This document shows, one piece after another, positions 7,101-63,183 of a DNA stretch of 64,000 nucleotides. Source of the DNA: Botryllus schlosseri (lineage: Eukaryota); contig CM119384.1 in the NCBI GenBank assembly GCA_051294905.1, forward strand, positions 1,240,001 to 1,304,000. Reading direction: 5' to 3'. The first letter of the stretch is position 1, and every line of letters starts with the position of its first letter. A program made the position numbers and the translations under genes. The notes beneath the pieces were generated by a model. The model did not search any database and was not told the DNA's origin. It saw only the letters and a program-made list of their open reading frames with translations.

Positions 7101-7741
7101 CACACACGAGGTGCAGTTTGCGGCGACGGAGTTGAATACTGGCTGTGATAATGCGGCTGTTTATAACGTCAATCTTTGCCTCGGCGTGGAAACGCTGGGA
7201 TAAGATTAGACCGACGCCTCCAACTCCGCCTTGGTTGGCAGGTGATTGGATCATGATGATGCCTGCGCCTAGGTGTTTTTCGCGGAATTGTTCAGTGAAG
7301 TGTTGGCGATGTTCTTGGATTGCCAACGCATCAAGTTTGAGGTCAGTCACAAGTGCGGCAGCTTCTTCCTGACGCCATACAGAGTTCAAAGTTCTCGTGT
7401 TCAGAGTTCCGAGTTTAACTTTTGCATTTAGGCTAATCCTCAGGGATCTTGGTTGAGGCTTCGGGTCTCCGGCGCCGCCCGGCAGATCCCAGTCTTTCTG
7501 TTGATATTGTCCAACTCGGCGAGTACGCAGTAACTTAAGGTAGTAAAGTCTTCGTCGCACTTTGCGACTTGGTCTACTCTGTTCTTTACTGCCTACACTG
7601 CGCAGCACGTCCAAGCTGTACGTAATCATGACAAGCAATCAGCTAGCGGAGCGAGAAATACACGTCTGCACTCGGCGACTGACTACTCCACCTGGCAATG
7701 TAGAGTAAAAAACGGTATTTTGAGATCTGAGCGGAAGTGAT

Positions 7742-45571: not shown

Positions 45572-47357
45572 GGTAAACGGCACCTTTATCTACCAAATCT
45601 AGCTTTCACACCTATTCTAATAGGCAGAAATGAGTCAAACGTACCGATCCCCGTGGAGATCTATTTGGTTTTATTAAAGCTTAATTAGTAATTAATATTA
45701 ATGACATTAGTTTAGGATTATTCACGGAAAAAATATCTGGTTCACTAATACGGCTCTTTCGAATTACGTAGCAAGGCTTGTGGCGGTAGTCAACGCGTAC
45801 CATAACCAAAGTCACCAAACCACACCTTACGTATATTCGCTGACCAACCCAAGGCACATAAACTTCTTACAGTAGTGGAATGGGGCAGTGATACAGTGAG
45901 CTAAAAGTTACACAAAAACAGAATCAAATACTGGACTACCAGTTTATTCAAGCAACAGTCCTAAACTAACTGCATTCATATTAATAACTAGTTACGCATG
46001 CAAATTGTAGAAAGGTAAATATTTACTTCATATGCCTTAACCAACAACAAAAGCTGGTTTGGTGACTAATCGCATGGGTTGATACTTCTAAATAACGATG
46101 GTTTGGTATGTGTAGCGAGTCGTGTTTATGCCCTTTATGGGTACCATCTTTTTAGATTAATGGTGTGATTGACTCGTTCGCCCATTGGAATGGACATGGA
46201 AGCACAATTTGGCCGCTGAAAATGTTATCTGCCTGATTTACACCGAGCGCTGTTGTGGAACCAGATCAATACGCCAATTTTCCACCAATGGATTTACCGT
46301 GTATTATAGTATTTAGTTACATTTTTACCAATTTATGTGAGATTTAGGAAATTATCTTCGTGATCAGCAGACATCGCAAAAAGTGATGCCCTGGGCCTGC
46401 GCGGATCTTGACTTATGCAACGAGCTTTGAATTGTTTTAGAACTCATTTATAATTGAGGCAGCCTGTTCTTTCCTTACTATTTTCCTGTTGATTCAAGTT
46501 TCGTATGTGAAATATACGTTTCTAGTTCATAATATGGATAACGGAGGTTAATCGACGAAATACATCTGGCTCAATATTTCGCACCGACCCGATATCAGCT
46601 CAATTTTGTCACCTACTACAGTCCAGTCGAAAAGCAGTCGTAACGACAGAACAAATTCTTTTTTGATATAAAATTGTACAATGTACATCAACAGTTTACA
46701 GATTATAACAGTAACACTGCGAGTTGATTTGGAGGTGCTTGCGCGTGCGTCAGGCTTAGCATACACTGCTACTAGACAGGTAAACATGATATAATATTAC
46801 GACACAAGGGACGCAAATTACGCTGCCTGATTACCAACAGCGGCCATTGTTGATTCGTCAAGCGCAGATCGCCTGAATAGTGAATAATTTCATTACACAA
46901 CATAATAGGCACTCCTGTTATTAAAGGTTATGGTCGACATTGTACATGATTCTAGTAAAACCAAAGATATATGTATATTGCATATTCTAGCTAGATCTAC
47001 GATATTATCCATCTCATCTTACTTATGAGGGTTAAAACGGAACCACTCCGTTAAATACGTTGATGATTCCAGAAATGAACATCGTACATTAGTAACGAAA
47101 GCAAGTCATAGCCGTCCAGTTAGAAAACATTTTCGATGTTGCATCAATTTTGAGTATACTATCCATTTACCAGTGCACCTTTTGGTGCGCTTTCCAGTTA
47201 ACAGGTTTTCATTATACATAAATTAAAGACCCTCTTCGAGGTACAGAACTTCGATATACAATTGACTATTATATTCATATTGAAATGAACCCGAACATTT
47301 TCGGCTGACACTCGTCAGCGGAAATCGTCAGGAACTAGTACAGAATTGGAAAGTATT

Positions 47358-50300
47358 TTATAAATCAACTGAATTGTCAAACCATTCACAGACATCATGT
47401 TGTAAGTCTATCGCGACGATGACTTTCCTAGCAGCCGCCTCCCACGAGGAGCCCAGCTCCAACCGGTCGTATATCATCGGACATTTCGCGTCCGCCAGTT
47501 TCCGTTCTTTTTTCAACCTTTCAACCAAGATTGCAAAGTGTTTATTTCCGAACCGAACAAAAGCCTCGTACAGCAATATCAGTGCGCTCTGACACAGCAT
47601 CTTCTTCGCTTGATTAAAACTTGTCGGGTCTAACGATTTACCGCCGGACGCGATCACAATCTTCTCGGCTGCCTTCTCTGCAAGATTCTCCATGTATTTT
47701 TCAGAACCGCCTGAAAGTTCAATGAGCTCTATCGCAATGCGAACGAGTAGCTCGTCAAAATCCTCTTTCGAGTTTACTTCCCGACGGGATAGTCCTGGTA
47801 CGTTTTCTGTATATCGCATCCGGGCTAAGCTTCGCACAGGAGCTGAACAGTCTTCATAGACATCATAACTAGATAGTATACAGTCTCCATAATCATCATC
47901 ATCATCATCACAGAAATGACGAAATATTGATTCGTCGATACCTGAAGTCTCTAAGGATGCTTGACATCCAAAGAACTCAGGTGGAGATGGAAGTTCCGGT
48001 GTCATGGGATCAGGCGATGCAGAGCTCGTGTCTTCAGATGATGCAGAGCTCGTGCCATCAGACGATGTGGCGCTTGTGTCATCATCTGAATTCGTTTCCT
48101 CAGCTAGATTCGCAGACAGCTTAAGGTTTGATTTTGATCGAGTTGCAGAAAGAAGACTATCTCGGTTTTTAGTACCCAGGTGAGACAAAGATACTGCTGC
48201 CTCTAAGAACATTTGTTCTTCTTCTGGAGAAAAATTGGAGTAACGTTGAGTACGATCATGGTGTCTAGATTTTACGGGTGGGCTGCTTGTGGGCGTGGGT
48301 AGATAAGAGTGCTGACAAGCGGGTGACTCTGATAGCCTTGAGCTGCCATGGAGTGGAGTTTGTGCAGAGTACCCGCGGGGCACAGGTGGCGTTGGATGTT
48401 CCGGTGGAATCGGACAAGAAAATTCATAACCCACGCCATCATCTGATTCCTCATCTTGATTCAAAGAAGCCCGCAAATGCGATCTATAAGCGACCGCTGC
48501 TACTGGTGATTCTCTTGCCGGTGCTGCTGTTGCTTGTGGTGCAGCTTTGCTTCCTGTAGGTTCAGCATTTACATCAGCATTTAGACGCAGACTCCTTGAG
48601 GGTGTGGAAAGTGAACCAGAAAATGGCTCTAGTATTTGCCCGTAACATTCGCGATCTTCTTCGAATACCTTCAGGACAATGGGTGGTGTTAGTTGTTCCT
48701 GTTCGAGTAAATCAAATAATGCAGAGCCCACGCCGTCATCTGATTCCTTATCCTGACTCGAAGAAGCCCGCAAATCAGATTTATAAGTGGCACTACTCAC
48801 AGGAGGAACAAGGTTTGTGCCTGCAGTTTCTGTTATTGCTATTGCCTGTGCTGCTGCCGCTCTTGCTCTTGATGCGTATTTTTTAAAATTTACTTCCACG
48901 TCTCTCTGTTGCATCGCAGCATATCGGGAAGTGCCGTATCCGCGGTCCTCTTTGTCCGGGATTGTTGCTGACTGTTGCTGCATACAAGCACTGTATTGAG
49001 CGCTTTGACGTGAAGAGCTGGACAGAGTTGAAGTCGAAGCAAAAGGTTGCGCTGGTTGCATTGAAGGCAAGTTTTCTGCAGTTTGTCCCCCGGCAGCTAG
49101 TTTATGAGACGGCTGCGCAAGCATAGGTGAATGATCCAATTGTAGTCTTGACATTTGAGCAGCAGTAAAGTGTCTTTTTTTCTTATGTAATGCTGTCGGA
49201 GATTGAAGTTCCCCCCCGCCAGTTACTGTTCCTCCCGCCGACAAGTAAGTCACGTTCGCCATCGATTTTTCCAAGCCAGAATTCAAATCAGAACCACCCG
49301 AGAATTTAAAGCCATGCCGCCCTTCCTTTGAAACAGGCGGACTCCCAGAGTCTATGGAAAGAAACCTGGGAGGCGCCATTGGTATACTTCGGCTGCCACT
49401 GTTTTTCATTTCCCAGGGTGGAGTTGGTTGTTCCTGTTCGATTGAATCAAATAATGCAGAACCCACGCCATCATCTGATTCCTTACCCTGATTCAAAGAA
49501 GCCCGCCAATCCGATTTATCAGGAGAAGGAACAAGGTTTGTGCCTGGAATATCAGATTTTCTCACCGGTGCTGCTGCTGCCACTCTTTCCAAATTGTCTG
49601 CCATTATCGGTGAGCTTAGTCGCTTATAATCACTGTGTTTAGCAGTTTGATGTGAAAAACCGAACAGAGTTGAAGGCGAAGCAAAAGGTTGCGTTGAAGG
49701 CAAGTTTTCTGCAGTTTGTCGGCCGGAAGCTGGTTTTTGAGACGGCTGATAAAGCCTAGGCGCACGTGCCAATAGCGGCCTTGGCATTTGAGGAACCGTC
49801 ATCCGTAATGGCGTTAGAGGGTGAAGTTCTCCCTCACCAGTTACTGTCCCTTTCGTAAATATCTGTTTCATGCTCGCCTTCGATTTTTCCAAGCCAAAAT
49901 TGCGGGGCTTAGGTGGCATCGGATGCTCCGGTGTAATTGGATGAGAAAATGAATATCCCATGTAATCGTCTGATTGCTTGTCCCGGATCGAAGAAGCCAG
50001 CCGATTCGATGCACTAGCAGCGCGATACGCATAAGGATTAATGCATGGAGTATCTGACAGATTTTCCAAAACAAGGCAATCCGTGGCTTTCAACGCGCTA
50101 GGTGCAGATGCCATCAATAATTTCTGTTTGAGCGAATCCATTCGTGCAGTTTCCACGCCATCATCAGATTCCTTGTCCTGATTCAAAGAAGACCCCAAAA
50201 CCGATTTATAGGGGGCACTATCCACAGAAGGAACAAGGTTTGTGCCTGGAATGACTGTTGCTGATTTTCTTATCGGTGCTGCCGCTGCCACTCTTTCCAT

Positions 50301-53300
50301 AGTCGCTGAACTTCGCCGCATATTATCACTGTGTTGAGTGCTTCGACGTGAAAAACCGTACAGAGTTGGAGGCGGAGAGAAAGATTGCGTTGAAGGCGAG
50401 TTTTCTGAAATTTGTTCACCGGCAGCTGGTTGTTGAGACGGCTGTTGCAGCCGGGGCGGATGTGCCGATGGTAGTCGATTTGACGTTCGAGCCTCATATT
50501 TTTTTTTCATCCTCCGTATTGGTGTTGGAGATTGAAGTTCTCCCCCGCCTGTTACTGTTCCTTTCGCCGACACGTGCTTCCCGCTCGCCATCGAGTTTTT
50601 TGAGTCAAAATTCCCATCAGAACCGCCGGAGAATTTCAAGCCACGCCCTTCCAATGATCCCAGTTGCCACGCTTGTGGAAGCGCAACATGATCGCGCAAC
50701 GGAACGGTATTTGAATTGGCAAATTCGACCGTATTGTGTGACATCTCTTTCGACATGTCTAATAAAGTGAATCGAGGTGGCTGAGGTAATTCCATGCTAT
50801 AAGATTGAATTCCGCTTTTCGCCATTGATTTTTCTGATTCATTTTCAACAGAAATAGCACATTTACGTCTGACGGCATTTGAAGATTTTCTTAACCTTCG
50901 ATTTACAATCCATTTTCGTTTCAACTCCGACTGCCACTCCTTCGCAGTCACCTCTTTGACAACATTTCGATATTCCTTTTCCATATCAATACCGCCAACG
51001 TAGTTCCAAAAGTCACCTTCCCCATAGAATGGTGTTCGAATTCTACACGAGATGAGAAAGGCCGCTACCACAGCGGGCCGGTACAATAAAGGAACGGACT
51101 GCAGACGCATCCTATTTTCAGCAGACCACGAATGCGACACAAGATCCTCAACCGCTTTTGAATAAGAGAGACTTTCACATTTGGACATTTCATGAAGAAC
51201 TTCATAATTCGGAGTACCGTCACGCAACAACGTTTTACTCAATATGGCGTCTGCGTTGGATCCTTCGATAGACACACCCAATCTCAAGCAAGATGCAGAT
51301 ACCAGCACCTTAGCCAGCGGATCCTTCTCGCACATTGAAAGAGCACTGTGCACCAATTCGCGAGCTCGAAGAATAGAGCTCGTCTCCATTTGCTCAACAC
51401 GCTTCAGGATATCTTTGATTTCATCTAGCGGCGATAGTTCCGAGTCAAGTTCCTGCCACGGCACTTCGGAGATTTCATCGACAAAGCAGGACTTCAGCAA
51501 TTCCTCAACAGTCGGTCCCGTGACGACGGACATGTCTTCTCCGGCTTCACGTTTTTCCACCGCGATAAAGCTGGTGAATTTGCAAACCACGGAATTTCTG
51601 ACGCTGAGCGAAATGATGTAAGACTTCCGCTCGTCTCGATATATTTCATCGACCAGGGAACTGTCGGCCAGATTCGCGGCTTCGTGTTCTTTGAAAATCG
51701 CTTTCGAAGCTAGATAATGAAGAGTTCTTCCTGTGACTTTGCTTTGAGAACTGACCGTAACTACTGTTGAGATTTCATTCCCCATAATGCGAGCGTGTAG
51801 AGTCGCTTTAGAGCAGTTTGGAGTGAAACTAAAAGCAGTCAATCGGGACCCACTGAAAACGCATTTGGGTTTTTCGGGTACGTTCACAAATGATTTACGA
51901 GTATCAGTTTCGTAGTTACACCAATCTATGTGCACATTCGTCAAAACCGGCTGTTGTGCGTAACGCAATTGATTCTTAATCTGACCCACCCACGTGTGTT
52001 TGACTGACGGTAAAAACTGCTCGTACTTGCCTCCTGTGAGATCACACATGCTCCGTAGAAAGTGCGCATTCGGCGATTCTCCAACAGCGAACGTAAAGAA
52101 TCTAGTCTGCGAAGAACTAACGTCTGAAATTTTCGACGCTAGTCGTAGTGTTCTTGTCTCCTCCGACAAGTGACCGTCGGAAATCAAAAACACGTTCTGC
52201 AGACTCGTTTGATATGACGAGTCACCGAGGAGTGACATAGCTGCAAGAATATGCACCAAATCCGAACCTCCGAGGTTTGGTTTGCAGGAGTTGATCATAT
52301 CTTTGGCCTTCAGCTTCATGTCATCGGAGGCGTTTTCAAACCTTACAAAGACTTCCTTAAAGTAAGACCCAAACACGACCACATTGAACTTTGTTGTGTC
52401 TGGAAGTAATTCTATTAAATTATTGGCGATATGCTTCGCGTGATTTCCGCTTTTACCGGCCATCGATGACGACATGTCAACCAGAATGGTACAGCAGTAA
52501 TCGTCACAAGCGTCAAAGTGAAATTCCGGGAAAAACGTCACCATAGCCACCTCGTTTGAATGCCCGTCCTCTATGTTATCTGTCCCTGTCTTATCTTCGA
52601 TGCGCTCGACCCAAATTCTGGGCACGTGAATTTCGGCGACTTTCACCAACAGTCGGAGTTTGTTCTTGAGCAAAGACGCAGAGCTTTTCAATTTCACGCA
52701 CGCTTTACTCAAAGTTTTCTTGTAACTTATGCCGTGCGTCGGCGAGCTAATGTCAAGTATATCGTACGGCATGTCGATTGACAGCATCAATGATGTTTTC
52801 TTTGCGTTCTGGGCTACTTTGAGAGAGTTCGTGATTGACTGAGTCGGGGATCCATCAATCAAAGTTGATTCTTGTTTTTGCTCTGATAAATTCTCAGGAA
52901 GTGTAAATAACACGCAGCTATCAGGATCGTTTACGGTTTCCAGCTCACAGACGTACTTGATCTTTATGATCACACGCGCTCTAGCAGGTATGTTGCCCAG
53001 ACTCAACGTAAAAACGTTAGGTTCTTCTTCGTCCATTAGATACGCACCGTGGCCTTGCGAAACCGCTTTTTTGTACTCTTTGCGAGCCTGCTGTTTCTCT
53101 TTCACTTCGCCGACAACATGTTTCTCGTTAATGAAAGCCTCGAATCCGCAAACGGCTGCGTTCTCTTCCAAAGGAAACACATATTTTCCTTCGATTTGCG
53201 AATTTAAATTGTTGTGGTACACTTGGAACACCGTAACCTCCGCGACAAGATCCAGGATTTTGCCGCGTACATGAAATTCTTCAAGATTCACTGCATTTTT

Positions 53301-55145
53301 CGTAGAGCTTACAAGTCCGTACGTCACGCTTTTGACAGACGGTTGAAACGATTCGGCAGATTCAATACTCGGTACATCTATCGTTGGCTTGAAGATCGGC
53401 AATTCCTTTAGCTGGTAATCAGTGCGCAGATTCTCCCCCGGCAATGTGAATTCAATGAGGTACTTCATTCTCTGTTGATTTTCCTTATAGATTGCAAATT
53501 CATTCCCAATCATTTCGCCATTCAAATTCTTTCCACAAACACAATCGAAACCCACTGGAGAAGATTGAAGCTCAGGCATACTTTTTTCAGTATTGTAAAC
53601 GCGCCCCAATGCAATTTCACTCACGAGCATCAGTCGCGTACCACGACTCTCACTCACGTTGGTGTATTTAGAAGATATCTGAAACGAGTCGGAGAAGTAT
53701 ATGCCGTGCCCTAGCTTCCCTTCATCTGTTCTGGGAATGCCTAATTCAGCAGACGCTTTCGATGGCATGACGAGACCTTTCGATAAAATACTGACGAAGT
53801 TGGACGTAGCTGACGAATGGAACAAGAGCCTTTTATTTTTCATTCCCGAGCGAAATTCGATGTCTTCCACCGTCCGACTGACTCGGTATATATTCACGAT
53901 TTCGTGTCTGCCTTCGTTTTGCGCCGGCAGCAAGTCTTTCACAAGCTTAAATTCATTTTCCGAAGGGCTAACATACCTGATCACGCAGTTCAGCGCAGAA
54001 TATTGCAGCATAAACGAGCGTAGGTCTACTGTATTCAAGAGATTTTCCTTGACACAAACTACATCTCTCAAAATCTGACAGATTTCACGTTCTTTCGCGA
54101 CTTTCCGAACAGAATCGATTACTTCCGTTGACTTTCTGCGGACGTACGTGTAGAATTCAGCAGAAAGCTTGCTACAATCTTTCCCTTCCTTGATTGCTTT
54201 CTCAATTTTCAGCAACGCCACCAGTCCGTTTCTCACATCGTGCGGAGTAATACTCTGAGAAATTACATCATACTCGGCAAGTGCTCCCAAGGAATCTTCC
54301 CAGAGAGTAGCGACCAAATGCTGTACTTTCTCATGTAAAGATCCTTTCGAAATTTTCATTTCTTCCAGTAAATTCTGCAATTTTTCTGTAGCCACGCCCT
54401 CAGCGGCAATCTCCATAATGTCCGTACATCTCCTTATATCGTTGCTTTCGATAGATTTTATCACAGATTCGTAACAGCGAGTTAAATCGTACAAATTCTT
54501 CACAAAATACATGGACCTGCGGACTTTGGTGTCACCGGTATGTTTTTGGCTGACCATAACGCGATACAACTCACCAGATTCGCTAGATACGTGAGCTTCA
54601 ACGCAGACAGCCCATTCATTTTTCTGGTTTGTTAGGAAAGAAAATTTAGCGACTTGAAACGTCTCAGGAAAATCAGGACATTCAGCACCGTCAAGCTTGT
54701 ATCTTTTCAACTTTTCCAAACTGAATTCCACCTTCTTTTTCTGTCTACTTTTATCGACCTTGTCACGAATAGAAATAGCTCCCCTTGAAAACTTATCTTT
54801 GATACCGCGCAGCACAGCTTCAGATTGCGGAGCAGGCAGTAGTTTACCGGCCGCGACACAGTCGCCCAGGAATTTCTCTGGAACCACAGAAACACCAATT
54901 TTCATAGCTTTTTGATGTCGGTATGTTTCTCTGTCAGAGTCACAAACGAAGAACGTCGTGTTTTTATTCAAAGTATAAGATATCTGACCGCCGTTTACCG
55001 TCACAAGCTGTCGTAGCGTCTTTTTGGCTTCCATTGTGTGTTGATGGAAATGGAACACGAATTGAACGCCGTTGAATATTCCTGGGTGTTTATCAATGGA
55101 AGGAGCAGGCATCACTGCTGGTTCACCTTGATAAAGCAGTGCCAC
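47358..55145 (-). CDS. PARP4: PARP4/vault PARP-like protein in one uninterrupted ORF (BRCT-PARP-VIT-vWA-repeat region-C-terminal MVP-binding-like region)
   Basis: 2595-codon ORF, first ATG at 55112. BRCT (GIFNGVQFVF...NGGQISYTLN); PARP catalytic LLFHSS (His at 53819), GIYFSDS, NEFAIY; VIT (EGKYVFPLEENAAVCGFEAFINEKHVVGEVKEKQQARKEY); vWA MIDAS DMSSSM and FLISDG; C-terminal RLELGSSW resembling the PARP4 C-terminus. Confidence 0.93.
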   Translation of the reverse strand: MALLYQGEPAVMPAPSIDKHPGIFNGVQFVFHFHQHTMEAKKTLRQLVTVNGGQISYTLNKNTTFFVCDSDRETYRHQKAMKIGVSVVPEKFLGDCVAAGKLLPAPQSEAVLRGIKDKFSRGAISIRDKVDKSRQKKKVEFSLEKLKRYKLDGAECPDFPETFQVAKFSFLTNQKNEWAVCVEAHVSSESGELYRVMVSQKHTGDTKVRRSMYFVKNLYDLTRCYESVIKSIESNDIRRCTDIMEIAAEGVATEKLQNLLEEMKISKGSLHEKVQHLVATLWEDSLGALAEYDVISQSITPHDVRNGLVALLKIEKAIKEGKDCSKLSAEFYTYVRRKSTEVIDSVRKVAKEREICQILRDVVCVKENLLNTVDLRSFMLQYSALNCVIRYVSPSENEFKLVKDLLPAQNEGRHEIVNIYRVSRTVEDIEFRSGMKNKRLLFHSSATSNFVSILSKGLVMPSKASAELGIPRTDEGKLGHGIYFSDSFQISSKYTNVSESRGTRLMLVSEIALGRVYNTEKSMPELQSSPVGFDCVCGKNLNGEMIGNEFAIYKENQQRMKYLIEFTLPGENLRTDYQLKELPIFKPTIDVPSIESAESFQPSVKSVTYGLVSSTKNAVNLEEFHVRGKILDLVAEVTVFQVYHNNLNSQIEGKYVFPLEENAAVCGFEAFINEKHVVGEVKEKQQARKEYKKAVSQGHGAYLMDEEEPNVFTLSLGNIPARARVIIKIKYVCELETVNDPDSCVLFTLPENLSEQKQESTLIDGSPTQSITNSLKVAQNAKKTSLMLSIDMPYDILDISSPTHGISYKKTLSKACVKLKSSASLLKNKLRLLVKVAEIHVPRIWVERIEDKTGTDNIEDGHSNEVAMVTFFPEFHFDACDDYCCTILVDMSSSMAGKSGNHAKHIANNLIELLPDTTKFNVVVFGSYFKEVFVRFENASDDMKLKAKDMINSCKPNLGGSDLVHILAAMSLLGDSSYQTSLQNVFLISDGHLSEETRTLRLASKISDVSSSQTRFFTFAVGESPNAHFLRSMCDLTGGKYEQFLPSVKHTWVGQIKNQLRYAQQPVLTNVHIDWCNYETDTRKSFVNVPEKPKCVFSGSRLTAFSFTPNCSKATLHARIMGNEISTVVTVSSQSKVTGRTLHYLASKAIFKEHEAANLADSSLVDEIYRDERKSYIISLSVRNSVVCKFTSFIAVEKREAGEDMSVVTGPTVEELLKSCFVDEISEVPWQELDSELSPLDEIKDILKRVEQMETSSILRARELVHSALSMCEKDPLAKVLVSASCLRLGVSIEGSNADAILSKTLLRDGTPNYEVLHEMSKCESLSYSKAVEDLVSHSWSAENRMRLQSVPLLYRPAVVAAFLISCRIRTPFYGEGDFWNYVGGIDMEKEYRNVVKEVTAKEWQSELKRKWIVNRRLRKSSNAVRRKCAISVENESEKSMAKSGIQSYSMELPQPPRFTLLDMSKEMSHNTVEFANSNTVPLRDHVALPQAWQLGSLEGRGLKFSGGSDGNFDSKNSMASGKHVSAKGTVTGGGELQSPTPIRRMKKKYEARTSNRLPSAHPPRLQQPSQQPAAGEQISENSPSTQSFSPPPTLYGFSRRSTQHSDNMRRSSATMERVAAAAPIRKSATVIPGTNLVPSVDSAPYKSVLGSSLNQDKESDDGVETARMDSLKQKLLMASAPSALKATDCLVLENLSDTPCINPYAYRAASASNRLASSIRDKQSDDYMGYSFSHPITPEHPMPPKPRNFGLEKSKASMKQIFTKGTVTGEGELHPLTPLRMTVPQMPRPLLARAPRLYQPSQKPASGRQTAENLPSTQPFASPSTLFGFSHQTAKHSDYKRLSSPIMADNLERVAAAAPVRKSDIPGTNLVPSPDKSDWRASLNQGKESDDGVGSALFDSIEQEQPTPPWEMKNSGSRSIPMAPPRFLSIDSGSPPVSKEGRHGFKFSGGSDLNSGLEKSMANVTYLSAGGTVTGGGELQSPTALHKKKRHFTAAQMSRLQLDHSPMLAQPSHKLAAGGQTAENLPSMQPAQPFASTSTLSSSSRQSAQYSACMQQQSATIPDKEDRGYGTSRYAAMQQRDVEVNFKKYASRARAAAAQAIAITETAGTNLVPPVSSATYKSDLRASSSQDKESDDGVGSALFDLLEQEQLTPPIVLKVFEEDRECYGQILEPFSGSLSTPSRSLRLNADVNAEPTGSKAAPQATAAPARESPVAAVAYRSHLRASLNQDEESDDGVGYEFSCPIPPEHPTPPVPRGYSAQTPLHGSSRLSESPACQHSYLPTPTSSPPVKSRHHDRTQRYSNFSPEEEQMFLEAAVSLSHLGTKNRDSLLSATRSKSNLKLSANLAEETNSDDDTSATSSDGTSSASSEDTSSASPDPMTPELPSPPEFFGCQASLETSGIDESIFRHFCDDDDDDYGDCILSSYDVYEDCSAPVRSLARMRYTENVPGLSRREVNSKEDFDELLVRIAIELIELSGGSEKYMENLAEKAAEKIVIASGGKSLDPTSFNQAKKMLCQSALILLYEAFVRFGNKHFAILVERLKKERKLADAKCPMIYDRLELGSSWEAAARKVIVAIDLQHDVCEWFDNSVDL

Positions 55146-55977: not shown

Positions 55978-58969
55978 CTGTAACAGGGCTGGATGTCTCT
56001 TTGAAAGCAAGAGCCTGATTCAGACCGTGGCACCACTGGTCCAAAATATTGTGTGATCTGTCAAAAGAATGTAAGCAAAAAATTTGTCATCTCAAAAATG
56101 ATGAAACAGAAGACAGGAGAGGATCCCCACCTTTCTTTGTCACTGCTTCGTACGTACATCACTATTTTTGAATCCGCAAATTTCAAGCTCAACCGAGTCC
56201 CATTTTTGAGTAGTCTCACACCCGCAATTGAAGTCAGAGGAATTTGCTGACAGGATAATGGGTCGCGCTTAAAATAGCGCAAAAAAGCAACAAAAATATG
56301 AATCACTGATACCTTGAAAATCAAAGATCCACCTTTAGACAAATACAGTGTGATGACGCCATCCTGAAATTTCCAAAAGTGACGTTTTTCCTGCAGAGTT
56401 AAATTAGGATTTAGTGAAAGTTCATACAAATACAAAAAACTTGTCAAATCGAGATATACGGCGGCATCTCTTTTTATAGCTTGTAAACCTGACATTACCT
56501 TGGAGTCAGTATTGGTGCTATGCATGAGCCAATTCTCCAAAGAAGGCTTGTCCAAGGCGTTTGGCTGTGAGAATAAATGAAATACATGTAATAAATTCAA
56601 CTATTCATAAAAGACAAAGCAAATAGGCTACCTTTTCTTGAAGTATTTACAATGAAACCAATATCAATGAGTATCTATTTAATTATGAAAGCACATTATT
56701 AAATACAATTGTGATAAAATATTACGTTTGATCAGTTAGACTTCATGACAAAAATTGATTACGGTCAGTTACACAAAATAGGAAACAGGATCAATGGCTT
56801 TGTGAAATACTTATGTAGTGCGAAAACATGTTTCAAATACAAGAACTCACTATAGGTATAAAAAATGTGGGTCTATTTAGCCAACAATTTTGATAGAATA
56901 CATCCACGGTATGGAGTAAAATCAGCAGTAAAGTATGCACAAGAATTAAAATGACAACAGTCTGCGTACTGATGGTAGGGAAAGGAGCCATTAGTTCAAC
57001 CATCAGTAACTAAGAGCCATAAATCAGGGTTGCAATGACTCGAGTCATGACTCGACTCGGCAAATTTTCGTTGTCTCGACTTGACTCGAGTTATTTTCTT
57101 AAAAGTGGATAATAACTTGACTCGAGTCAATTTGTGTATTGACTCGATTTGTACTCGAGTCATTACGCATGACTCGACCAAGTCATATGACTCGGCACAT
57201 TCTATATGACCTATTCAAGTCTCTTATATCAGGACCGATCATTGAAAAATTGGCCCAGAAACTATTTTTTCTATTTGTATAAACATGTTTAGTGCGAAAA
57301 ATGAATATATTTCGAATCCAAGGCCTTCGATATCACCCAAGAGTTTTCCAGAAGCGAGTTGAAACAGACTTGAACTGATAAGTACACTATGACTTGGACT
57401 CGGACTCGAGTCTTAACACAACGATTCGGACTCGTCCTGTTGCTTCCTGACTTGGACTTGACTCGGCAGTGAGCTGAAAATGACACGAATTGACTCGAGT
57501 CAAAACTATAAAAGTCAAATTGACTTGTGACTCGGACCTTGTGACTTGGTTATAACGAGGGCAAGTTTTTGCAACTTTTTTTACTGCTTCCGGCAGTTTC
57601 CTAAATACTCAGAAGTTATTTAGTTTTAAGCTGTTTGGAGGAATCATATAGTGCAACTTTTTGGAGCTTTGCTCCATTTTTTCAGACTAGTTTAATTCAA
57701 CTTTATCGCTATTTCATGCAACTTTTATCGATTTTTCATATAAATTTTTGCAAGATTTTTATTTTATTTTCCATGTATCTAACTTTTTACTGGAAATATT
57801 TGGCACTATATGTAAATAGATCGATTGATTATTTCACTGTCGTTTAAATTTGAGGTCCTTTATGATTTGACGTATATTCAGGCTAGACCGCCGAAAATTA
57901 TATTCTCATTTGGTCAATGTTTTCAGGCTATTGATTTTGTTGAAGTCGCCAACGCTGAGTTTTGCTACAGTGCCTTGGATACGGATCAATTAGAGTATCT
58001 CATACCCTCATAATTTCAAGGAACTTGTCCATAAATGCAACTTTGTAGTGTAACTTTTGCGAAAAAAAAATCGCAACTTTCGTCGGATTTGACTGCAACA
58101 AAAACTTGCCCTAGTTATAACATTGCTATAAATATTTAGATTTTGCAGCTTAATTTTGATACAAAGATACAATGCTGATCTAGTTATGCATTACACTTAT
58201 GAACAACAATAAATATAACATATCTAAATTCCCAACCTTTTCATTTTCGTTGGTAATTGCTTGAGGCAATATCCAGCCAGCAGGGGAAGTTGAGAATTGT
58301 TGTTTGAGTGGTTTCAGGTCAAGTTTTTGTTCCAATTTGCATCCATCCAATGCAAGCATACTAGAATGAGACTGGCTGTATAAGTTAACTTAAATTAACT
58401 TACTCGGTAGCACATTCATTAATTTCAGACATTGTCTGACATAGTGTCAATATTGATCTGTATTTGACATGATAAGCAACATGTTCACAACAATATCAAC
58501 AGGTTCACAACCACAGAGATGTTAATCATTTAAGAATTCATGACACGGATCAAAAAGTAATCAAAGAATGCGTACTCGTGGCAATGAGTTTTAAAACTTA
58601 CTGCAAGACTTTATTGTCCAATGGACCGGTACCTGATGATGCCTGTAACATAAAAAATGATATAGTTCTCTCATTCACAAAATTTCATGCTGGTGACGTC
58701 ATATTTTGTGATACGATTGTTGATATACAATGTTCTTTCCAATTCTCTACTAGTTGCTGACGATTACCCCTGACGAAAATCAGCCGAAAATATTTGTGTT
58801 CATTTCAATATGAATATACTATTTAATTGTATATTGAAGTTCTGTACCTCCAAGAAGCAGTTCAAACTGAATAAACAAGCATAAAATTCGTACTTACCAA
58901 CATGGACATTTCTTGAATTGCTGCTTTCAGCTGTAATATTTCAAGATCAGATAATGGTGGAATTGAAAT
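55978..58969 (-). CDS. Multi-exon coding segment ending in a PH domain (partial model)
   Basis: Phase-consistent GT-AG exons 58969-58898, 58642-58602, 58457-58404, 58360 (or 58375)-58237, 56564-56499, 56390-56313, 56267-56131, 56057-55978. PH-like part: PSLENWLMHSTNTDSK/EKRHFWKFQDGVITLYLSK.../QIPLTSIAGVRLL...SLKFADSKIVMYVR.../LDQWCHGLNQAL. Confidence 0.65.
57557..58113. mobile_element. hAT-like MITE family C copy
   Basis: TIRs gagggcaagttt...aaacttgcccta; TSD gttataac. Confidence 0.85.
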
Positions 58970-60655: not shown

Positions 60656-63183
60656 CTTGAATCGATCATTCACGTTCCTGTGATTGTGTGCCGTGACGAA
60701 AAATCGGGACTTTCCTTTCGCGGTATCTTCATTCTCATTTAGGACACCAGTGTCACAAACGTGTTTGGAAGTGACAAGTTTTTTGTTGAGAAATGAAACG
60801 ATATACTGATCATCCACCAATGCTGAGAGAACCTTAATTCAAATGAGAAACTAAACTGAAATATTCTGTAAAGGAACAAACTTCCTAACAGCTATAACCA
60901 GCTGTAACTAACTCAATACACAATGGGTATATCAAATCGATGACTTGAATCCGATTTGATTACTAGTTGACTGGTACAAGTTGAGTACTGCTAGCAGATT
61001 CCATCATCTTCAACGAGTGCCGATATCTCGCCCATGGCATCAAAATTTCATTCTCAAACAAGGGGATTATTGTGCTTTGAGCTATCACATGATTGTCGGT
61101 GTCAAGACACGACAGCGGGAACGAATGTTAAAGATATTCAATGTTCATAGCAGCACAAAATGGCTTTCATCATATATAGCTCGGTATGTTGGCATCAATT
61201 TCTAGTTGTCCAGTAAATGGATAATAAATGCATATTGACAAGAGTCATTGGTGTATGCATATATTTTGTCACATAAAATTCTTCAAAGAAGAATACCTAA
61301 TTCTGGCAACAGTCTATTCTATAGACATTGTGTCATCATATCTTTGATTAGTCGTATAAAAGAACCACAATATCGAGAAGAAACAATAACAATGACGACA
61401 TAAGCACCTAGGATATTTAGATTATGATTCATATAAACATAAGCCCTACAAAAGTATTGCATTACAAAGCATCAAAGTGTAGGCCTACCTATCTCTTGAC
61501 CTAATTGGTATAAGTATTAGTGCACAATAGGGCTGTTCAAAGTTTTTTTTTTCAATTTTACTGGCTATTATATAAATTAGTTACCTAAAAGAAACGGTGC
61601 ACACCAACTTTGGTGCAATCCCAACAAGTGGACGCGAATATATTGATGTTCAAAATTTAAGATTTCAAATCATACTACCGATATTTACGGTGGATAGATC
61701 TAGAATAAATAATGAAAAAATTTGCCATCGTAAATACTATTTTTTCCAAATCCGAAATTTTGCACTCTAATAACTTTGCTGCTTGAGTCAAATTTGTTGT
61801 GCATCGTTCTTTTTCAGACGACCTAACAATTTCATGGGGTAGCCAGTAAAATTCGAAAAAGATCCACATTTATTTTCATCAAATAAATCCAAAATTTTCT
61901 ACTACAAAAAAATTCGCTGCCACGTGCTCAAAGATTGAGTTCCTCCTCATAGACTAGTAGTTAAGGTCATACCAAACGAGATATACACCCTACCTGACCC
62001 TTGCTGTTAACACTGATGATACCATCCACGGCCGCGCATGGGGCTGTGGCAAATATTATGTCTGTACTCATTCTGTTTTTGAACATGCAGTCCAGTGTCT
62101 CCAGATGGTAGAGATGAAAAAATCCGTGTTTGCTTAAGACAAGCAAAACTTTGTGAACTTTTGACTCCTGAAAATTCAACAATCATTCAATAGAAGTTTT
62201 AAATAGCAACATGAAAACTCCCCGAATTCAAGTAATTCTATTTGTTCTATTAGGCGCGAAGATGTGGAGAAGTTCATTCTATAAATAAATTACCCATTTG
62301 TGACGAGGAATTTGCACGCCATATGGCCATTGGGTCATTGAAATTGGTGATTTCAAAACGTCAAAATTTATATACCAGTAATTGAGACCTGGACATCGGG
62401 GACAAAAAATATAAATCCCAATTACTATTCCTAAATTAAAATTAAATTGGCCTCTTTTGCGAAAAAATAAAGGTGTGTGTACCAGTCATAAAACTATTTT
62501 ACTATCACGGTAGCAGATTGAATAGAAAATACACAAGATATGCTTACATAGTGATAAAAATAGTGAAAATATCAAGACATATTGCCATATATATTCTACT
62601 CAAAGCTTTTCAAATGACTCTAATCCAGAACGAATGTCACTAAATGCGGTGAATCCACACGGTAAGAACTTAACATACTGGAAAACATATAACAACACAC
62701 AATCAGTACATGTAACAGAGACAAATTTGGCTATAAAAATAACCGAATAGCATCACAACACTGATGAAAAACATTCCAAAAAACAGCAAATTTAAAATGC
62801 CAACCTGCATATCAATAGGAGTGTCGTTTGGTATTGAAAAAGTCACTACGACAGACCTTTTCCGGAAAGGTTGATCCATAGACACTGCGTGGCTGACTTG
62901 TGCCACACTGAGTACGTTGCCCTTTTGTGTGCTCGAAGCAGAGCATAGCAAAATGGAAGAATCCTACACATAACTAAATGTCAGATAACATATTCTTATT
63001 AACTAAGTTCATTTATTTACCTTATTTCCATCGAGCACTATCTCAGCAAATGTGGCAACATGCCCTTCCAGTATCTTGGTAGTGCCGGACTGGACAGAAT
63101 ACCTTTGTATGGTTCCACTGGTCGCTCGTTCACCCTTCGTCAATGTTCCAATGATGAGAGAGTGTTTCTGCTGTGAATCGGTC
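60656..63183 (-). CDS. Divergent clathrin heavy chain terminal-domain/linker paralogue (partial; 5-prime exons probably outside the window)
   Basis: Exons 63183-63021, 62963-62805, 62167-61994 and 60832-60656, all GT-AG and in phase: TDSQQKHSLIIG...IQRYSV...LEGHVATFAE / QPFRKRSVVV...NDTPIDMQ / SKHGFFHLYHLETLDCMFKNRMSTDIIFATAP...GIISVNSKGQ / VLSALVDDQYIVSFL. Colinear with clathrin heavy chain propeller and linker as I recall that sequence. Confidence 0.8.

What the first reader, a model, noticed from the sequence alone, without database searches (positions are those of the whole stretch)
48410..50190. PARP4 carries five ribosomal P-stalk-like acidic motifs
Seen: DKESDDGVETARMD (~50145-50185), KQSDDYMGYSF (~49945-49980), GKESDDGVGSALFD (~49445-49490), DKESDDGVGSALFD (~48710-48755) and DEESDDGVGYEF (~48420-48460); four of the five are preceded by an Ala-rich AAAAP-type stretch. 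Established: P0/P1/P2 stalk proteins end in an Ala-rich hinge plus EESDDDMGFGLFD, which recruits eEF1A/eEF2 and GCN2 and is bound by ribosome-inactivating toxins. Inference: multivalent stalk mimicry could dock an ADP-ribosyltransferase on translation factors or act as a toxin decoy. The match is degenerate and internal rather than C-terminal, so chance acidic similarity is possible.
Basis: partly seen in the sequence, partly recalled or inferred. Interest (0 to 1): 0.7.

Follow-up and report, generated by a model that had tools for sequence, protein, structure and literature searches.

The report
Ribosomal-stalk-tail mimics in vault PARP4
A sea-squirt vault enzyme (PARP4) carries five worn copies of the short peptide that normally ends the ribosome's stalk proteins. 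PARP4 of sponges, molluscs, echinoderms, amphioxus and a fish carries near-perfect copies beside pieces of actin, ubiquitin, synaptobrevin and other proteins that I recall as toxin targets, so this tail may be a bait array for pathogen factors.

Summary
All five motifs lie at the stated places inside one uninterrupted 2595-aa ORF (window 47358-55145, minus strand). The ORF is the genome's only PARP4 orthologue, with BRCT, PARP (H-Y-E present), VIT and VWA domains and a C-terminal vault-anchor-like region. Its best match is Styela clava at 48% identity, so the genome is an ascidian.

The five copies are not independent. Each caps a unit of an internally duplicated, predicted-disordered linker.

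Similarity to the stalk tail is short and degenerate. It matches the genome's own P1/P2 tail at 8 of 13 positions. Pfam Ribosomal_60s and a custom HMM do not detect it. It still exceeds chance: consensus score 41, P=2e-5 to 5e-5 in tail shuffles; PSSM P=4e-4; profile-profile probability 85%.

The decisive context is in the orthologues. At least 20 species in four phyla carry near-canonical ESD(D/E)DMGFGLFD inside the same linker. Beside it sit fragments of actin (D-loop), ubiquitin, 14-3-3, synaptobrevin, HSP70, EF-hands and FG repeats.

A natural allele turns copy 2 into SDDDMGY.

I read the motifs as diverged stalk-tail mimics displayed multivalently, most likely as pathogen bait. Function is untested, and I found no paper describing this. 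The scan had noted this same stretch before (s1-274214).

The parts
47358..55145 (-). Single uninterrupted ORF of 2595 aa (first Met at residue 12): the PARP4 / vault-PARP orthologue and the only one in the genome.
54831..55088 (-). BRCT domain (aa 20-105).
   Evidence: Pfam
53448..53957 (-). PARP catalytic domain (aa 397-566). The H-Y-E triad columns are conserved in alignment with mammalian, ascidian, sponge and amphioxus PARP4.
52953..53285 (-). VIT domain (aa 621-731).
52020..52487 (-). VWA domain (aa 887-1042).
50076..50657 (-). Long tail repeat A (aa 1497-1690), ending in motif m1.
   Evidence: self-comparison and alignment
50136..50177 (-). m1, DKESDDGVETARMD. It keeps the acidic half and has lost the hydrophobic half. 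An R1668Q variant occurs in other individuals.
49881..50078 (-). Short module (aa 1690-1755), ending in m2 plus a PxxPEHPxPP tail. It is the paralogue of the m5 module.
49947..49982 (-). m2, DKQSDDYMGYSF. The variant 49964 A>C (Y1728D), seen in contigs of two runs from two studies, gives SDDDMGYSF and raises the consensus score from 26 to 35 (P=1.6e-4).
49392..49901 (-). Long tail repeat B (aa 1749-1918), ending in m3.
49446..49487 (-). m3, GKESDDGVGSALFD. Consensus score 41, PSSM 9.5 bits. The G1887D variant makes it identical to m4.
48657..49331 (-). Long tail repeat C (aa 1939-2163), ending in m4.
48711..48752 (-). m4, DKESDDGVGSALFD. It is the best copy: PSSM 14.7 bits, P=4e-4.
48354..48581 (-). 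Short module (aa 2189-2264), ending in m5 plus a PxPPEHPTPP tail.
48420..48455 (-). m5, DEESDDGVGYEF.
47376..47750 (-). C-terminal region (aa 2466-2590) that aligns with the extreme C-termini of PARP4 from sharks, sponges, corals and other ascidians. It is the likely counterpart of the human MVP-binding MINT domain.
   Evidence: MINT = human residues 1562-1724 in PMC12280208

Best explanation
The five motifs are diverged copies of a ribosomal P-stalk tail module (...EESDDDMGFGLFD). PARP4 carried this module ancestrally in the long disordered linker between its VWA domain and its vault-anchoring C-terminus.

In this ascidian the module sits at the end of a repeat unit that was duplicated, giving three long and two short units and hence five copies. 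That happens to be the number of stalk tails on one ribosome. The copies keep the acidic SDD core and, between them, the M-G-aromatic and L-F-D parts.

Inferred mechanism: the tail displays these short linear motifs multivalently on a flexible tether, probably in the vault lumen. This would capture proteins that dock on stalk tails. Orthologous tails carry the same module next to fragments of actin, ubiquitin, 14-3-3, synaptobrevin, HSP70, calmodulin-like EF-hands and FG repeats. From recalled knowledge these are targets or cofactors of microbial toxins. The most likely role is therefore a bait or decoy for pathogen factors such as ribosome-inactivating proteins, which would hold them away from ribosomes and next to the ADP-ribosyltransferase domain.

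Shown here: sequence, repeat anatomy, family context, statistics. Inferred: any binding and any defensive role.
For: **Gene identity and state**
- Pfam gives BRCT-PARP-VIT-VWA. The best hits are PARP4 of Styela clava and all major animal groups.
- It is single-copy in the 495-Mb genome.
- H-Y-E is conserved and the C-terminus aligns with orthologue C-termini.

**Family context**
- A consensus scan of 120 orthologues finds scores of 35-63 (of 66) in 24 proteins from at least 20 species: sponges, echinoderms, molluscs, amphioxus and the fish Anableps. All hits lie in the tail. The maximum over 1210 shuffles was 34.
- Pfam Ribosomal_60s hits those tails over up to 64 profile columns.
- In Ephydatia the module's exons lie between the VWA exons and the C-terminal exons of one gene.
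- Of 45 invertebrate tails, 18 hit Actin, 11 ubiquitin, 6 14-3-3, 4 Synaptobrevin, 3 FG-Nup, 3 WH2, 2 HSP70, 2 EF-hand and 2 Pol II CTD (sequences).

**The motifs in this protein**
- Consensus score 41, P=2e-5 to 5e-5. PSSM built from 21 orthologue modules: 14.7 and 9.5 bits, P=4e-4 and 4e-3.
- hhalign of the five-copy profile against the orthologue profile gives probability 85% and P=6e-6.
- They match the genome's own P1/P2 tails (...EESDDDMGFGLFD) at 8 of 13 positions.
- Different paralogous copies keep different canonical residues. The Y1728D allele gives SDDDMGY.
- Between repeats B and C the motif has 1 changed residue in 14 codons, against 15 in the 30 flanking codons.

**Setting and literature**
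- The repeat region is predicted disordered (pLDDT 44).
- In vertebrates the corresponding disordered PARP4 region is the only part under positive selection and was proposed to bind pathogen factors (PMC4038475).
- Stalk tails bind RIPs through DDD plus FGLF/LF (PMC3280276, PMC5086656).
- They bind translational GTPases through a few hydrophobic residues (PMC5887453).
Against: - Pfam Ribosomal_60s and a custom HMM of orthologue modules do not score these motifs above shuffled controls.
- Similarity beyond the roughly 13-residue core to the organism's own P-protein C-terminal exon is not significant (P=0.06-0.14).
- The closest orthologues available, Styela clava and Ciona, have no such motif. 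Clavelina has only a degenerate SSDDAMGFCVVD. Continuity of descent within tunicates is therefore not shown.
- The tail has no detectable relative at all.
- The motifs are internal, not C-terminal.
- F7 and G8, both needed for Shiga-like toxin A1 binding in an alanine scan, are S and A here.
- m1 has lost the hydrophobic half altogether.
- None of the other host-protein fragments seen in other phyla is present in this protein.
- No binding or expression evidence exists: the runs that hold the locus could not be shown to be RNA.
Confidence: 0.4

Rival explanations
1. The molecular identity is the same (stalk-tail mimics), but the clients are the cell's own stalk-binding proteins: eEF2, eEF1A, eRF3, eIF5B or GCN2. 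[quoted passage not shown] The result would be regulation of translation rather than defence.
For: - Stalk tails recruit translational GTPases through a few hydrophobic residues with loose sequence requirements (PMC5887453). A degenerate ...ALFD could therefore suffice.
- The stalk activates GCN2 (PMC6421407, title and abstract only).
- About one vault in ten encloses an 80S ribosome in Dictyostelium (PMC13100048).
- The catalytic triad is intact.
Against: - This reading does not explain why orthologous tails also carry actin D-loop, synaptobrevin, ubiquitin, 14-3-3, HSP70 and FG fragments.
- It does not explain why the linker evolves so fast that no relative is detectable. A housekeeping interaction should be conserved in Styela and Ciona, and it is not.
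Confidence: 0.2
2. The resemblance to the stalk tail is coincidental. The conserved island is another short linear motif in an acidic disordered repeat. Candidates, all from recalled consensus patterns, are a beta-TrCP-type degron (DDG-hydrophobic-x-S/T fits m1, m3, m4), a CK2 site, a caspase-like ESDD|G cut site, or an FFAT-like ALFDSIE.
For: - The only residues invariant in all five copies are S-D-D.
- m1 keeps DDGVET but not the hydrophobic half.
- HMM tests are negative.
- The nearest orthologues lack the motif.
Against: - These alternative patterns are short enough to occur by chance, and none fits all five copies.
- The stalk-consensus score, the PSSM and hhalign are all significant.
- The prior is raised strongly by canonical stalk tails in the same linker of many orthologues.
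- The Y1728D allele recreates SDDDMG.
Confidence: 0.2
3. The motifs are decaying relics without present function. They would be copies of an ancestral module carried along by neutral duplication of a repeat in a fast-evolving linker.
For: - The copies are degenerate and unequal: m1 and m5 score 21-23.
- Sharks and a soft coral show similar half-decayed relics, and mammals have none.
- Polymorphic replacements fall inside the motifs.
Against: - The motif is the best-conserved island of the repeat: 1 of 14 codons changed against 15 of 30 in the flanks between repeats B and C.
- m3 and m4 differ by two synonymous changes yet keep 13 identical residues.
- The 7.8-kb ORF is intact, and the one indel seen is in frame.
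Confidence: 0.2

Closest known systems
C-terminal tail of ribosomal stalk proteins P0/P1/P2 (SD[D/E]DMGFGLFD; Pfam Ribosomal_60s PF00428)
   Same: - Acidic run with Ser, then G-x-x-L-F-D at the same spacing.
- 8 of 13 positions identical to this genome's own P1/P2 tails.
- An Ala-rich stretch lies upstream.
- Five copies per molecule, as there are five tails per ribosome.
   Different: - Internal rather than at a free C-terminus.
- M to V, F to S and G to A in the best copies.
- No N-terminal dimerisation domain.
- Not detected by PF00428.
- Only three loci in the genome encode the canonical tail, and PARP4 is not one of them.
Stalk-tail modules inside PARP4 orthologues (for example Amphiura, Branchiostoma, Patella, Ephydatia, Amphimedon, Anableps), found here
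   Same: - Same protein family and same linker between VWA and the C-terminal anchor.
- Internal position, followed by more acidic residues.
- Sometimes duplicated.
   Different: - Those are near-canonical (scores 42-63 of 66, several recognised by Pfam), with one or two copies.
- The ascidian copies score 21-41, number five, and sit in a lineage-specific repeat.
Rapidly evolving disordered region of vertebrate PARP4 (human exon 30; Daugherty et al. 2014, PMC4038475)
   Same: - Same position in the protein, disordered, and highly variable in length and sequence.
- Proposed to bind pathogen factors and bring them to the vault or to the ART domain.
   Different: - No recognisable host-protein mimic was reported there.
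- The mammalian sequences scanned here have no stalk-like motif.
Integrated decoys of plant NLRs and the 'tripwire' regions of NLRP1/CARD8
   Same: A copy or mimic of a pathogen's host target is built into a defence-related protein (PMC4246468 and PMC7857732, titles and abstracts).
   Different: - The scaffold is a PARP-VIT-VWA vault protein, not an NLR.
- No signalling output is known.
- Many different mimics sit in one tail.
- The function is unproven.
Synthetic stalk-tail peptides used as inhibitors of ricin A chain (PMC6162817; stalk peptide as inhibitory module in PMC3021518)
   Same: A stalk-tail peptide offered in trans, away from the ribosome, to occupy the toxin's stalk-binding site (titles and abstracts).
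   Different: Those peptides are engineered and canonical. The motifs here are natural, internal, multivalent and degenerate.

Membership tests
PARP4 / vault PARP (PARP clade 5) | [quoted passage not shown] | tested here: met
   Pfam: BRCT 20-105, PARP_reg 299-367, PARP 397-566, VIT 621-731, VWA 887-1042. The top 120 homologues are PARP4.
PARP4 / vault PARP (PARP clade 5) | H-Y-E catalytic triad. | tested here: met
   The H (FHSS), Y (GIYFSD) and E (NEFAIY) columns are shared with bat, mouse, Styela, Ciona, Ephydatia and amphioxus PARP4.
PARP4 / vault PARP (PARP clade 5) | C-terminal MVP-interaction (MINT) domain that anchors the protein in the vault. | tested here: inconclusive
   aa 2466-2590 align with the extreme C-termini of many orthologues at E=6e-8 to 1e-2. 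Neither the fold nor MVP binding was tested.
Ribosomal stalk proteins P0/P1/P2 (PF00428) | Match to the Ribosomal_60s profile. | tested here: not met
   No hit for the whole protein at E<=1, nor for the five motif segments at E<=10.
Ribosomal stalk proteins P0/P1/P2 (PF00428) | Conserved tail SD[D/E]DMGFGLFD at the free C-terminus. | tested here: not met
   The motifs are internal and degenerate, matching the genome's own P1/P2 tails at 8 of 13 positions. This protein mimics the stalk tail and is not a member of the family.
Stalk-tail mimic module of PARP4 tails (defined in this report) | Lies in the variable linker between VWA and the C-terminal anchor. | tested here: met
   The motifs lie at aa 1657-2242, between VWA (ends 1042) and the C-terminal region (2466-2590). 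Orthologue modules lie at aa about 1240-2240.
Stalk-tail mimic module of PARP4 tails (defined in this report) | Sequence similarity to the orthologue modules (acidic run plus MGFGLFD). | tested here: inconclusive
   In favour: PSSM P=4e-4 (m4) and 4e-3 (m3), and hhalign 85%, P=6e-6. Against: the HMM built from the same 21 seeds is not significant.
Integrated decoy / bait | A pathogen effector or toxin binds or modifies the mimic, and this changes the outcome of infection. | not testable with these tools
   Only sequence context is available.
beta-TrCP-type degron (D-[DS]-G-hydrophobic-x-[ST], recalled consensus) | Pattern match in all copies, plus dependence on the ligase. | tested here: not met
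   The pattern fits m1, m3 and m4 only, not m2 or m5. The consensus is recalled, and no chance rate or ligase dependence was tested here.

The most novel reading that the evidence does not exclude
The disordered tail of PARP4 is a metazoan-wide, fast-turning-over array of integrated mimics of the cell's most conserved proteins. These include the stalk tail, actin D-loop, ubiquitin, 14-3-3, the synaptobrevin SNARE motif, the HSP70 substrate-binding domain, calmodulin-like EF-hands, FG repeats, Pol II CTD, ESCRT-III and the clathrin propeller. Tethered inside the vault, the array would make the vault a caged bait or trap (or sensor) for toxins, effectors and viral proteases. The ascidian's five stalk-like motifs would be a lineage-specific copy of the pentavalent ribosomal stalk. 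This would give vaults and PARP4 a concrete, testable immune function.
Probability: 0.3. Interest if true: 0.9.

Novelty: new variant of a known kind. Interest (0 to 1): 0.75.

Why it matters
The function of vaults and of PARP4 has been open for decades. The only evolutionary clue so far was positive selection confined to a disordered PARP4 region in mammals (PMC4038475).

In invertebrates and some fish, that same region turns out to carry recognisable pieces of the ribosomal stalk tail and of other proteins that I recall as toxin targets. That turns a vague 'binds something from pathogens' idea into concrete experiments: which toxins or effectors bind which module, whether they are ADP-ribosylated or sequestered, and whether the tail protects translation.

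It would also be the first natural stalk-tail mimic outside the ribosome that I could find. It may be an animal counterpart of plant integrated decoys.

For this particular ascidian gene the motifs are worn. The window is a lead into the family-wide pattern rather than its best example.

Tried and rejected
- **Pfam on this protein.** Ribosomal_60s found nothing on the whole protein or on the five segments.
- **Custom HMM.** An HMM built from 21 orthologue stalk modules scored this protein at -2.8 bits, below the best shuffles. Short local HMM scores with an acidic bias correction have little power here. PSSM, consensus and profile-profile tests were significant.
- **Relatives of the tail.** The search for homologous proteins on aa 1480-2270 gave nothing. 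phmmer of aa 1400-2595 against 1.84 billion representatives gave 0 hits. No closer relatives could therefore be compared.
- **Longer similarity.** Each module compared with the organism's own P-protein C-terminal exon was not significant (P=0.06-0.14). The Ala-rich stretch alone does not show homology.
- **Complex prediction.** This gives no verdict, and I did not try it another way. The ascidian's own eEF2 could not be obtained unaltered because of introns.
- **Expression.** 20 runs from 9 studies hold the stretch, and contigs are colinear with no joints. Their RNA status is only guessed, and contigs also cover the flank below the stop codon. Transcription is not shown.
- **Other modules here.** No actin, ubiquitin, 14-3-3 or synaptobrevin module was found in this protein.
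- **Annotation-artefact reading of the orthologue modules.** I rejected this for three reasons. The modules recur across phyla. In Ephydatia they lie between PARP4 N- and C-terminal exons. P0036 stands on a single 8.4-kb contig.
- **Literature.** No paper in the library holds PARP4 together with 'P-stalk' or 'ribosomal stalk'. Searches pairing PARP4 with 'decoy', 'integrated decoy', 'tripwire' or 'molecular mimicry' listed nothing on this. Only an appended 14-3-3 domain was noted before (PMC4245714).
Full report
**1. What is there**

The stretch lies inside one uninterrupted minus-strand ORF, window 47358-55145, of 2595 codons. Pfam finds:
- BRCT (aa 20-105)
- PARP regulatory and catalytic domains (aa 299-566)
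- VIT (aa 621-731)
- VWA (aa 887-1042)

Pfam finds nothing in the remaining 1550 residues. A search with aa 1-1250 returns PARP4 (vault PARP) from all major animal groups. The best matches are Styela clava PARP4-like at 47-48% identity, then an unnamed transcript-derived protein at 43%, then Clavelina at 36% and Ciona at 34%. The genome is therefore an ascidian.

It is the only PARP4 in the 495-Mb assembly. The H-Y-E catalytic columns are conserved. The last roughly 125 residues (aa 2466-2590) align with the extreme C-termini of PARP4 from sharks, sponges, corals and other ascidians. In human PARP4 the C-terminal MINT domain (residues 1562-1724) anchors the protein to the inner wall of the vault, and long disordered regions bridge the folded domains in the lumen (PMC12280208).

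**2. The observation**

| Motif | Sequence | Residues |
|---|---|---|
| m1 | DKESDDGVETARMD | 1657-1670 |
| m2 | DKQSDDYMGYSF | 1722-1733 |
| m3 | GKESDDGVGSALFD | 1887-1900 |
| m4 | DKESDDGVGSALFD | 2132-2145 |
| m5 | DEESDDGVGYEF | 2231-2242 |

They are not five independent events. Self-comparison shows three long repeats (aa 1497-1690, 1749-1918, 1939-2163) at 45-60% identity. It also shows two short paralogous modules (aa 1690-1755 and 2189-2264). Each unit ends in one motif.

The repeat has other conserved islands: GTVTGGGELQSPTP, an FG-like PSTQPFASPSTLFGFS, RVAAAAP and GTNLVPS. The block around K-E-S-D-D-G-V is the best conserved, and only S-D-D is invariant in all five.

Between repeats B and C, the 14 motif codons carry 1 amino-acid change and 2 synonymous changes. 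The 30 flanking codons carry 15 amino-acid changes. This is modest evidence for constraint on the motif.

AlphaFold2 on aa 1480-1920, run without an alignment, gives no fold (mean pLDDT 44).

**3. Is the stalk resemblance more than chance?**

This genome has exactly three loci that encode a canonical stalk tail. Two end ...KEESEEESDDDMGFGLFD (probably P1 and P2) and one ends ...EEEEDSSDEDMGFDLFG (probably P0). m3 and m4 match the former at 8 of 13 positions in register: E-S-D-D, G and L-F-D.

Negative tests:
- Pfam Ribosomal_60s does not hit the protein or the motif segments.
- A HMM built from 21 orthologue modules does not beat shuffles.
- Longer alignments to the organism's P-protein C-terminal exon are not significant.

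Positive tests:
- The BLOSUM62 score against ESDDDMGFGLFD is 41 for m3 and m4. This was reached in 2e-5 to 5e-5 of tail shuffles.
- A PSSM from the 21 orthologue modules gives 14.7 bits (P=4e-4), 9.5 bits (P=4e-3) and 3.0 bits (P=0.04) for m4, m3 and m5. m2 and m1 are not significant.
- hhalign of the five-copy profile against the orthologue profile gives probability 85% and P=6e-6 over 18 columns.

Different copies keep different canonical residues. m2 keeps M-G-aromatic, and m3 and m4 keep L-F-D.

Contigs from two runs of two studies carry 49964 A>C, which changes Y1728 to D. That turns m2 into SDDDMGYSF, six consecutive canonical residues, and raises its score from 26 to 35 (P=1.6e-4). Together this points to an ancestor close to ESDDDMG(F/Y)xLFD.

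**4. The family context, which changes the picture**

I scanned the 120 best PARP4 homologues with the same consensus. Scores of 35-63 (of 66) occur in 24 proteins from at least 20 species. The maximum over 1210 shuffles was 34. Every such hit lies in the tail and none lies in the N-terminal 1150 residues.

Examples:
- Amphiura: DSDDDMGFGLFDDDDD
- Branchiostoma: ESDEEMGFGLFDDD
- Patella: ESDDEMGYGLFD
- Amphimedon: ESDDNMAFGLFD
- Ephydatia: EEDENMGFSLFD, twice
- Anableps (fish): ESDEDMGFGLFD, twice
- Many bivalves and gastropods

Pfam Ribosomal_60s recognises several of these, in Ephydatia over profile columns 25-88, which takes in part of the hinge as well. Half-decayed versions occur in Clavelina (SSDDAMGFCVVD, directly before an actin fragment), in a soft coral and in sharks. 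The mammals in the list have none, and Styela and Ciona have none.

In the Ephydatia genome the exons carrying the module lie in order between the VWA exons and the C-terminal exons of one gene. The modules are therefore not fused neighbouring genes.

**5. The same tails carry other host-protein pieces**

Pfam hits (E<=1e-3) over 45 invertebrate tails, one per species:

| Family | Tails with a hit |
|---|---|
| Actin | 18 |
| Ubiquitin | 11 |
| 14-3-3 | 6 |
| Synaptobrevin | 4 |
| Nucleoporin FG repeats (including Styela) | 3 |
| WH2 | 3 |
| HSP70 | 2 |
| EF-hand pairs | 2 |
| RNA polymerase II CTD repeats | 2 |
| Snf7 | 1 |
| PDZ | 1 |

Two Mytilus proteins also have a clathrin propeller repeat in the tail.

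These are fragments, not whole proteins:
- **Actin:** residues about 5-70, with the stretch [20 protein letters not shown] nearly invariant (five of the six examples; one has M and I for Q and V) while its flanks drift.
- **14-3-3:** the C-terminal half.
- **Ubiquitin:** complete, ending LRLRGG and continuing into the tail.
- **Synaptobrevin:** the SNARE-motif segment, which includes the Q-F bond region.
- **HSP70:** the substrate-binding domain.

From established knowledge, not tested here, these proteins are classic targets or cofactors of microbial toxins and effectors:
- actin-modifying toxins
- clostridial-type proteases that cut synaptobrevin
- 14-3-3, ubiquitin and calmodulin as activators of injected enzymes
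- ribosome-inactivating proteins that dock on the stalk tail

Only the appended 14-3-3 domain has been noted in the papers I could search (PMC4245714). No paper in the library holds PARP4 together with 'P-stalk' or 'ribosomal stalk'. Searches pairing PARP4 with 'decoy', 'integrated decoy', 'tripwire' or 'molecular mimicry' listed nothing on this.

**6. How it most likely works**

Established points from the literature:
- The stalk tail binds Shiga-like toxin A1 through DDD and FGLF(D) with a Kd of about 10 uM. The paper notes that five copies sit on each ribosome, which adds avidity (PMC3280276).
- Trichosanthin uses DDD plus LF, and ricin A uses GFGLFD (PMC5086656).
- Translational GTPases need only a few hydrophobic residues of the tail and recognise it loosely (PMC5887453).
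- In vertebrates the corresponding disordered PARP4 region is the only part under positive selection. It was proposed to bind pathogen factors and either ADP-ribosylate them or sequester them in vaults (PMC4038475).

Inference: the ascidian tail shows five SDD...(L)F(D) motifs on a flexible tether between the enzyme core and the vault anchor. This would be a multivalent stand-in for the ribosomal stalk. It would capture stalk-tail binders, most plausibly toxins of the ribosome-inactivating kind, and less plausibly the cell's own eEF2, eEF1A or GCN2.

Weak points:
- F7 and G8 of the canonical tail are S and A here, and m1 has lost the hydrophobic half.
- The motifs are internal.
- The nearest relatives lack them.
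- This protein has none of the other modules.

Rival readings are kept open:
- another short motif, for example a beta-TrCP-type DDG-hydrophobic-x-S/T degron, which fits m1, m3 and m4 only
- decaying relics without present function

**7. State of the locus**

The stretch is present in 20 public runs from 9 studies. Contigs are colinear with the genome, with no joints. One 3-base in-frame deletion occurs at 50122, and there are many single-base variants. Variants inside motifs include G1887D, which makes m3 identical to m4, R1668Q in m1, and Y1728D in m2. Whether the small runs are RNA is only a guess, so transcription is not shown.

**8. Verdict**

- The stalk-mimicry reading is partly supported for this gene. 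For the PARP4 family it is strongly supported as sequence mimicry.
- The functional reading as bait or decoy is the best-fitting hypothesis and is untested.
- For this ascidian the motifs are a degenerate, lineage-specific, multiplied variant.
- The family-wide pattern is the more important result, and I could find no description of it.

Noticed in passing
Homologues P0004, P0006, P0013, P0018, P0021, P0035, P0039, P0077 (tails, aa about 1300-1570): PARP4 tails of sponges, a hemichordate, bivalves and the ascidian Clavelina contain an actin fragment (residues about 5-70). Its D-loop stretch [20 protein letters not shown] stays nearly invariant while the flanks diverge. 18 of 45 invertebrate tails hit Pfam Actin.
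   Followed up: partly
Homologues P0005, P0018, P0027, P0023 (tails): Synaptobrevin SNARE-motif fragments occur inside PARP4 tails. Other embedded pieces are whole ubiquitin ending LRLRGG, the C-terminal half of 14-3-3, the HSP70 substrate-binding domain, Snf7, EF-hand pairs, Pol II CTD heptads, WH2, PDZ and a clathrin propeller repeat (Mytilus).
   Followed up: partly
window 56313-56387 (-): A 25-residue stretch upstream of the ORF matches the N-terminal extension of Styela clava PARP4-like isoform X2 (aa 71-95) at 48% identity, E=5e-4. The gene may therefore have an upstream exon, as another first-stage note (s1-274177) suggests.
   Followed up: partly
window 62042-62155 (-): Weak match (32% over 38 aa, E=0.009) to the clathrin-propeller region in the tail of a Mytilus PARP4-like protein (P0076). 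A clathrin-like gene next to PARP4 here, and a clathrin propeller inside PARP4 tails in mussels, may be related facts.
   Followed up: no
window 47270-47318: A roughly 45-base element about 40 bases beyond the PARP4 stop codon has contig depth in the hundreds to thousands. Many contigs break there, so it is a very high-copy short repeat.
   Followed up: no
window 4567-7638 (-): Three overlapping ORFs carry a reverse transcriptase (RVT_1, E=4e-27) and an endonuclease/exonuclease/phosphatase domain. This is a non-LTR retrotransposon with broken frames, and it explains the GC-rich block at 4-8 kb.
   Followed up: partly
window 49392-50657 and 48657-49331 (-), repeat islands: Each long repeat has an FG-like island (PSTQPFASPSTLFGFS). 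The tail of Styela clava PARP4 consists of SSLFGSS-polyproline repeats that hit Pfam Nucleoporin_FG. FG-repeat mimicry may be the module shared among stolidobranch ascidians.
   Followed up: no
window 47900-48100 (-), aa about 2350-2430: A Ser/Asp-rich tract with a 24-base tandem repeat, then an acidic-aromatic cluster (DDDDDDYGD...YDVYED), lies just before the C-terminal anchor. Similar acidic-aromatic clusters precede the C-terminal region in Ciona and in the unnamed transcript-derived protein P0003.
   Followed up: no
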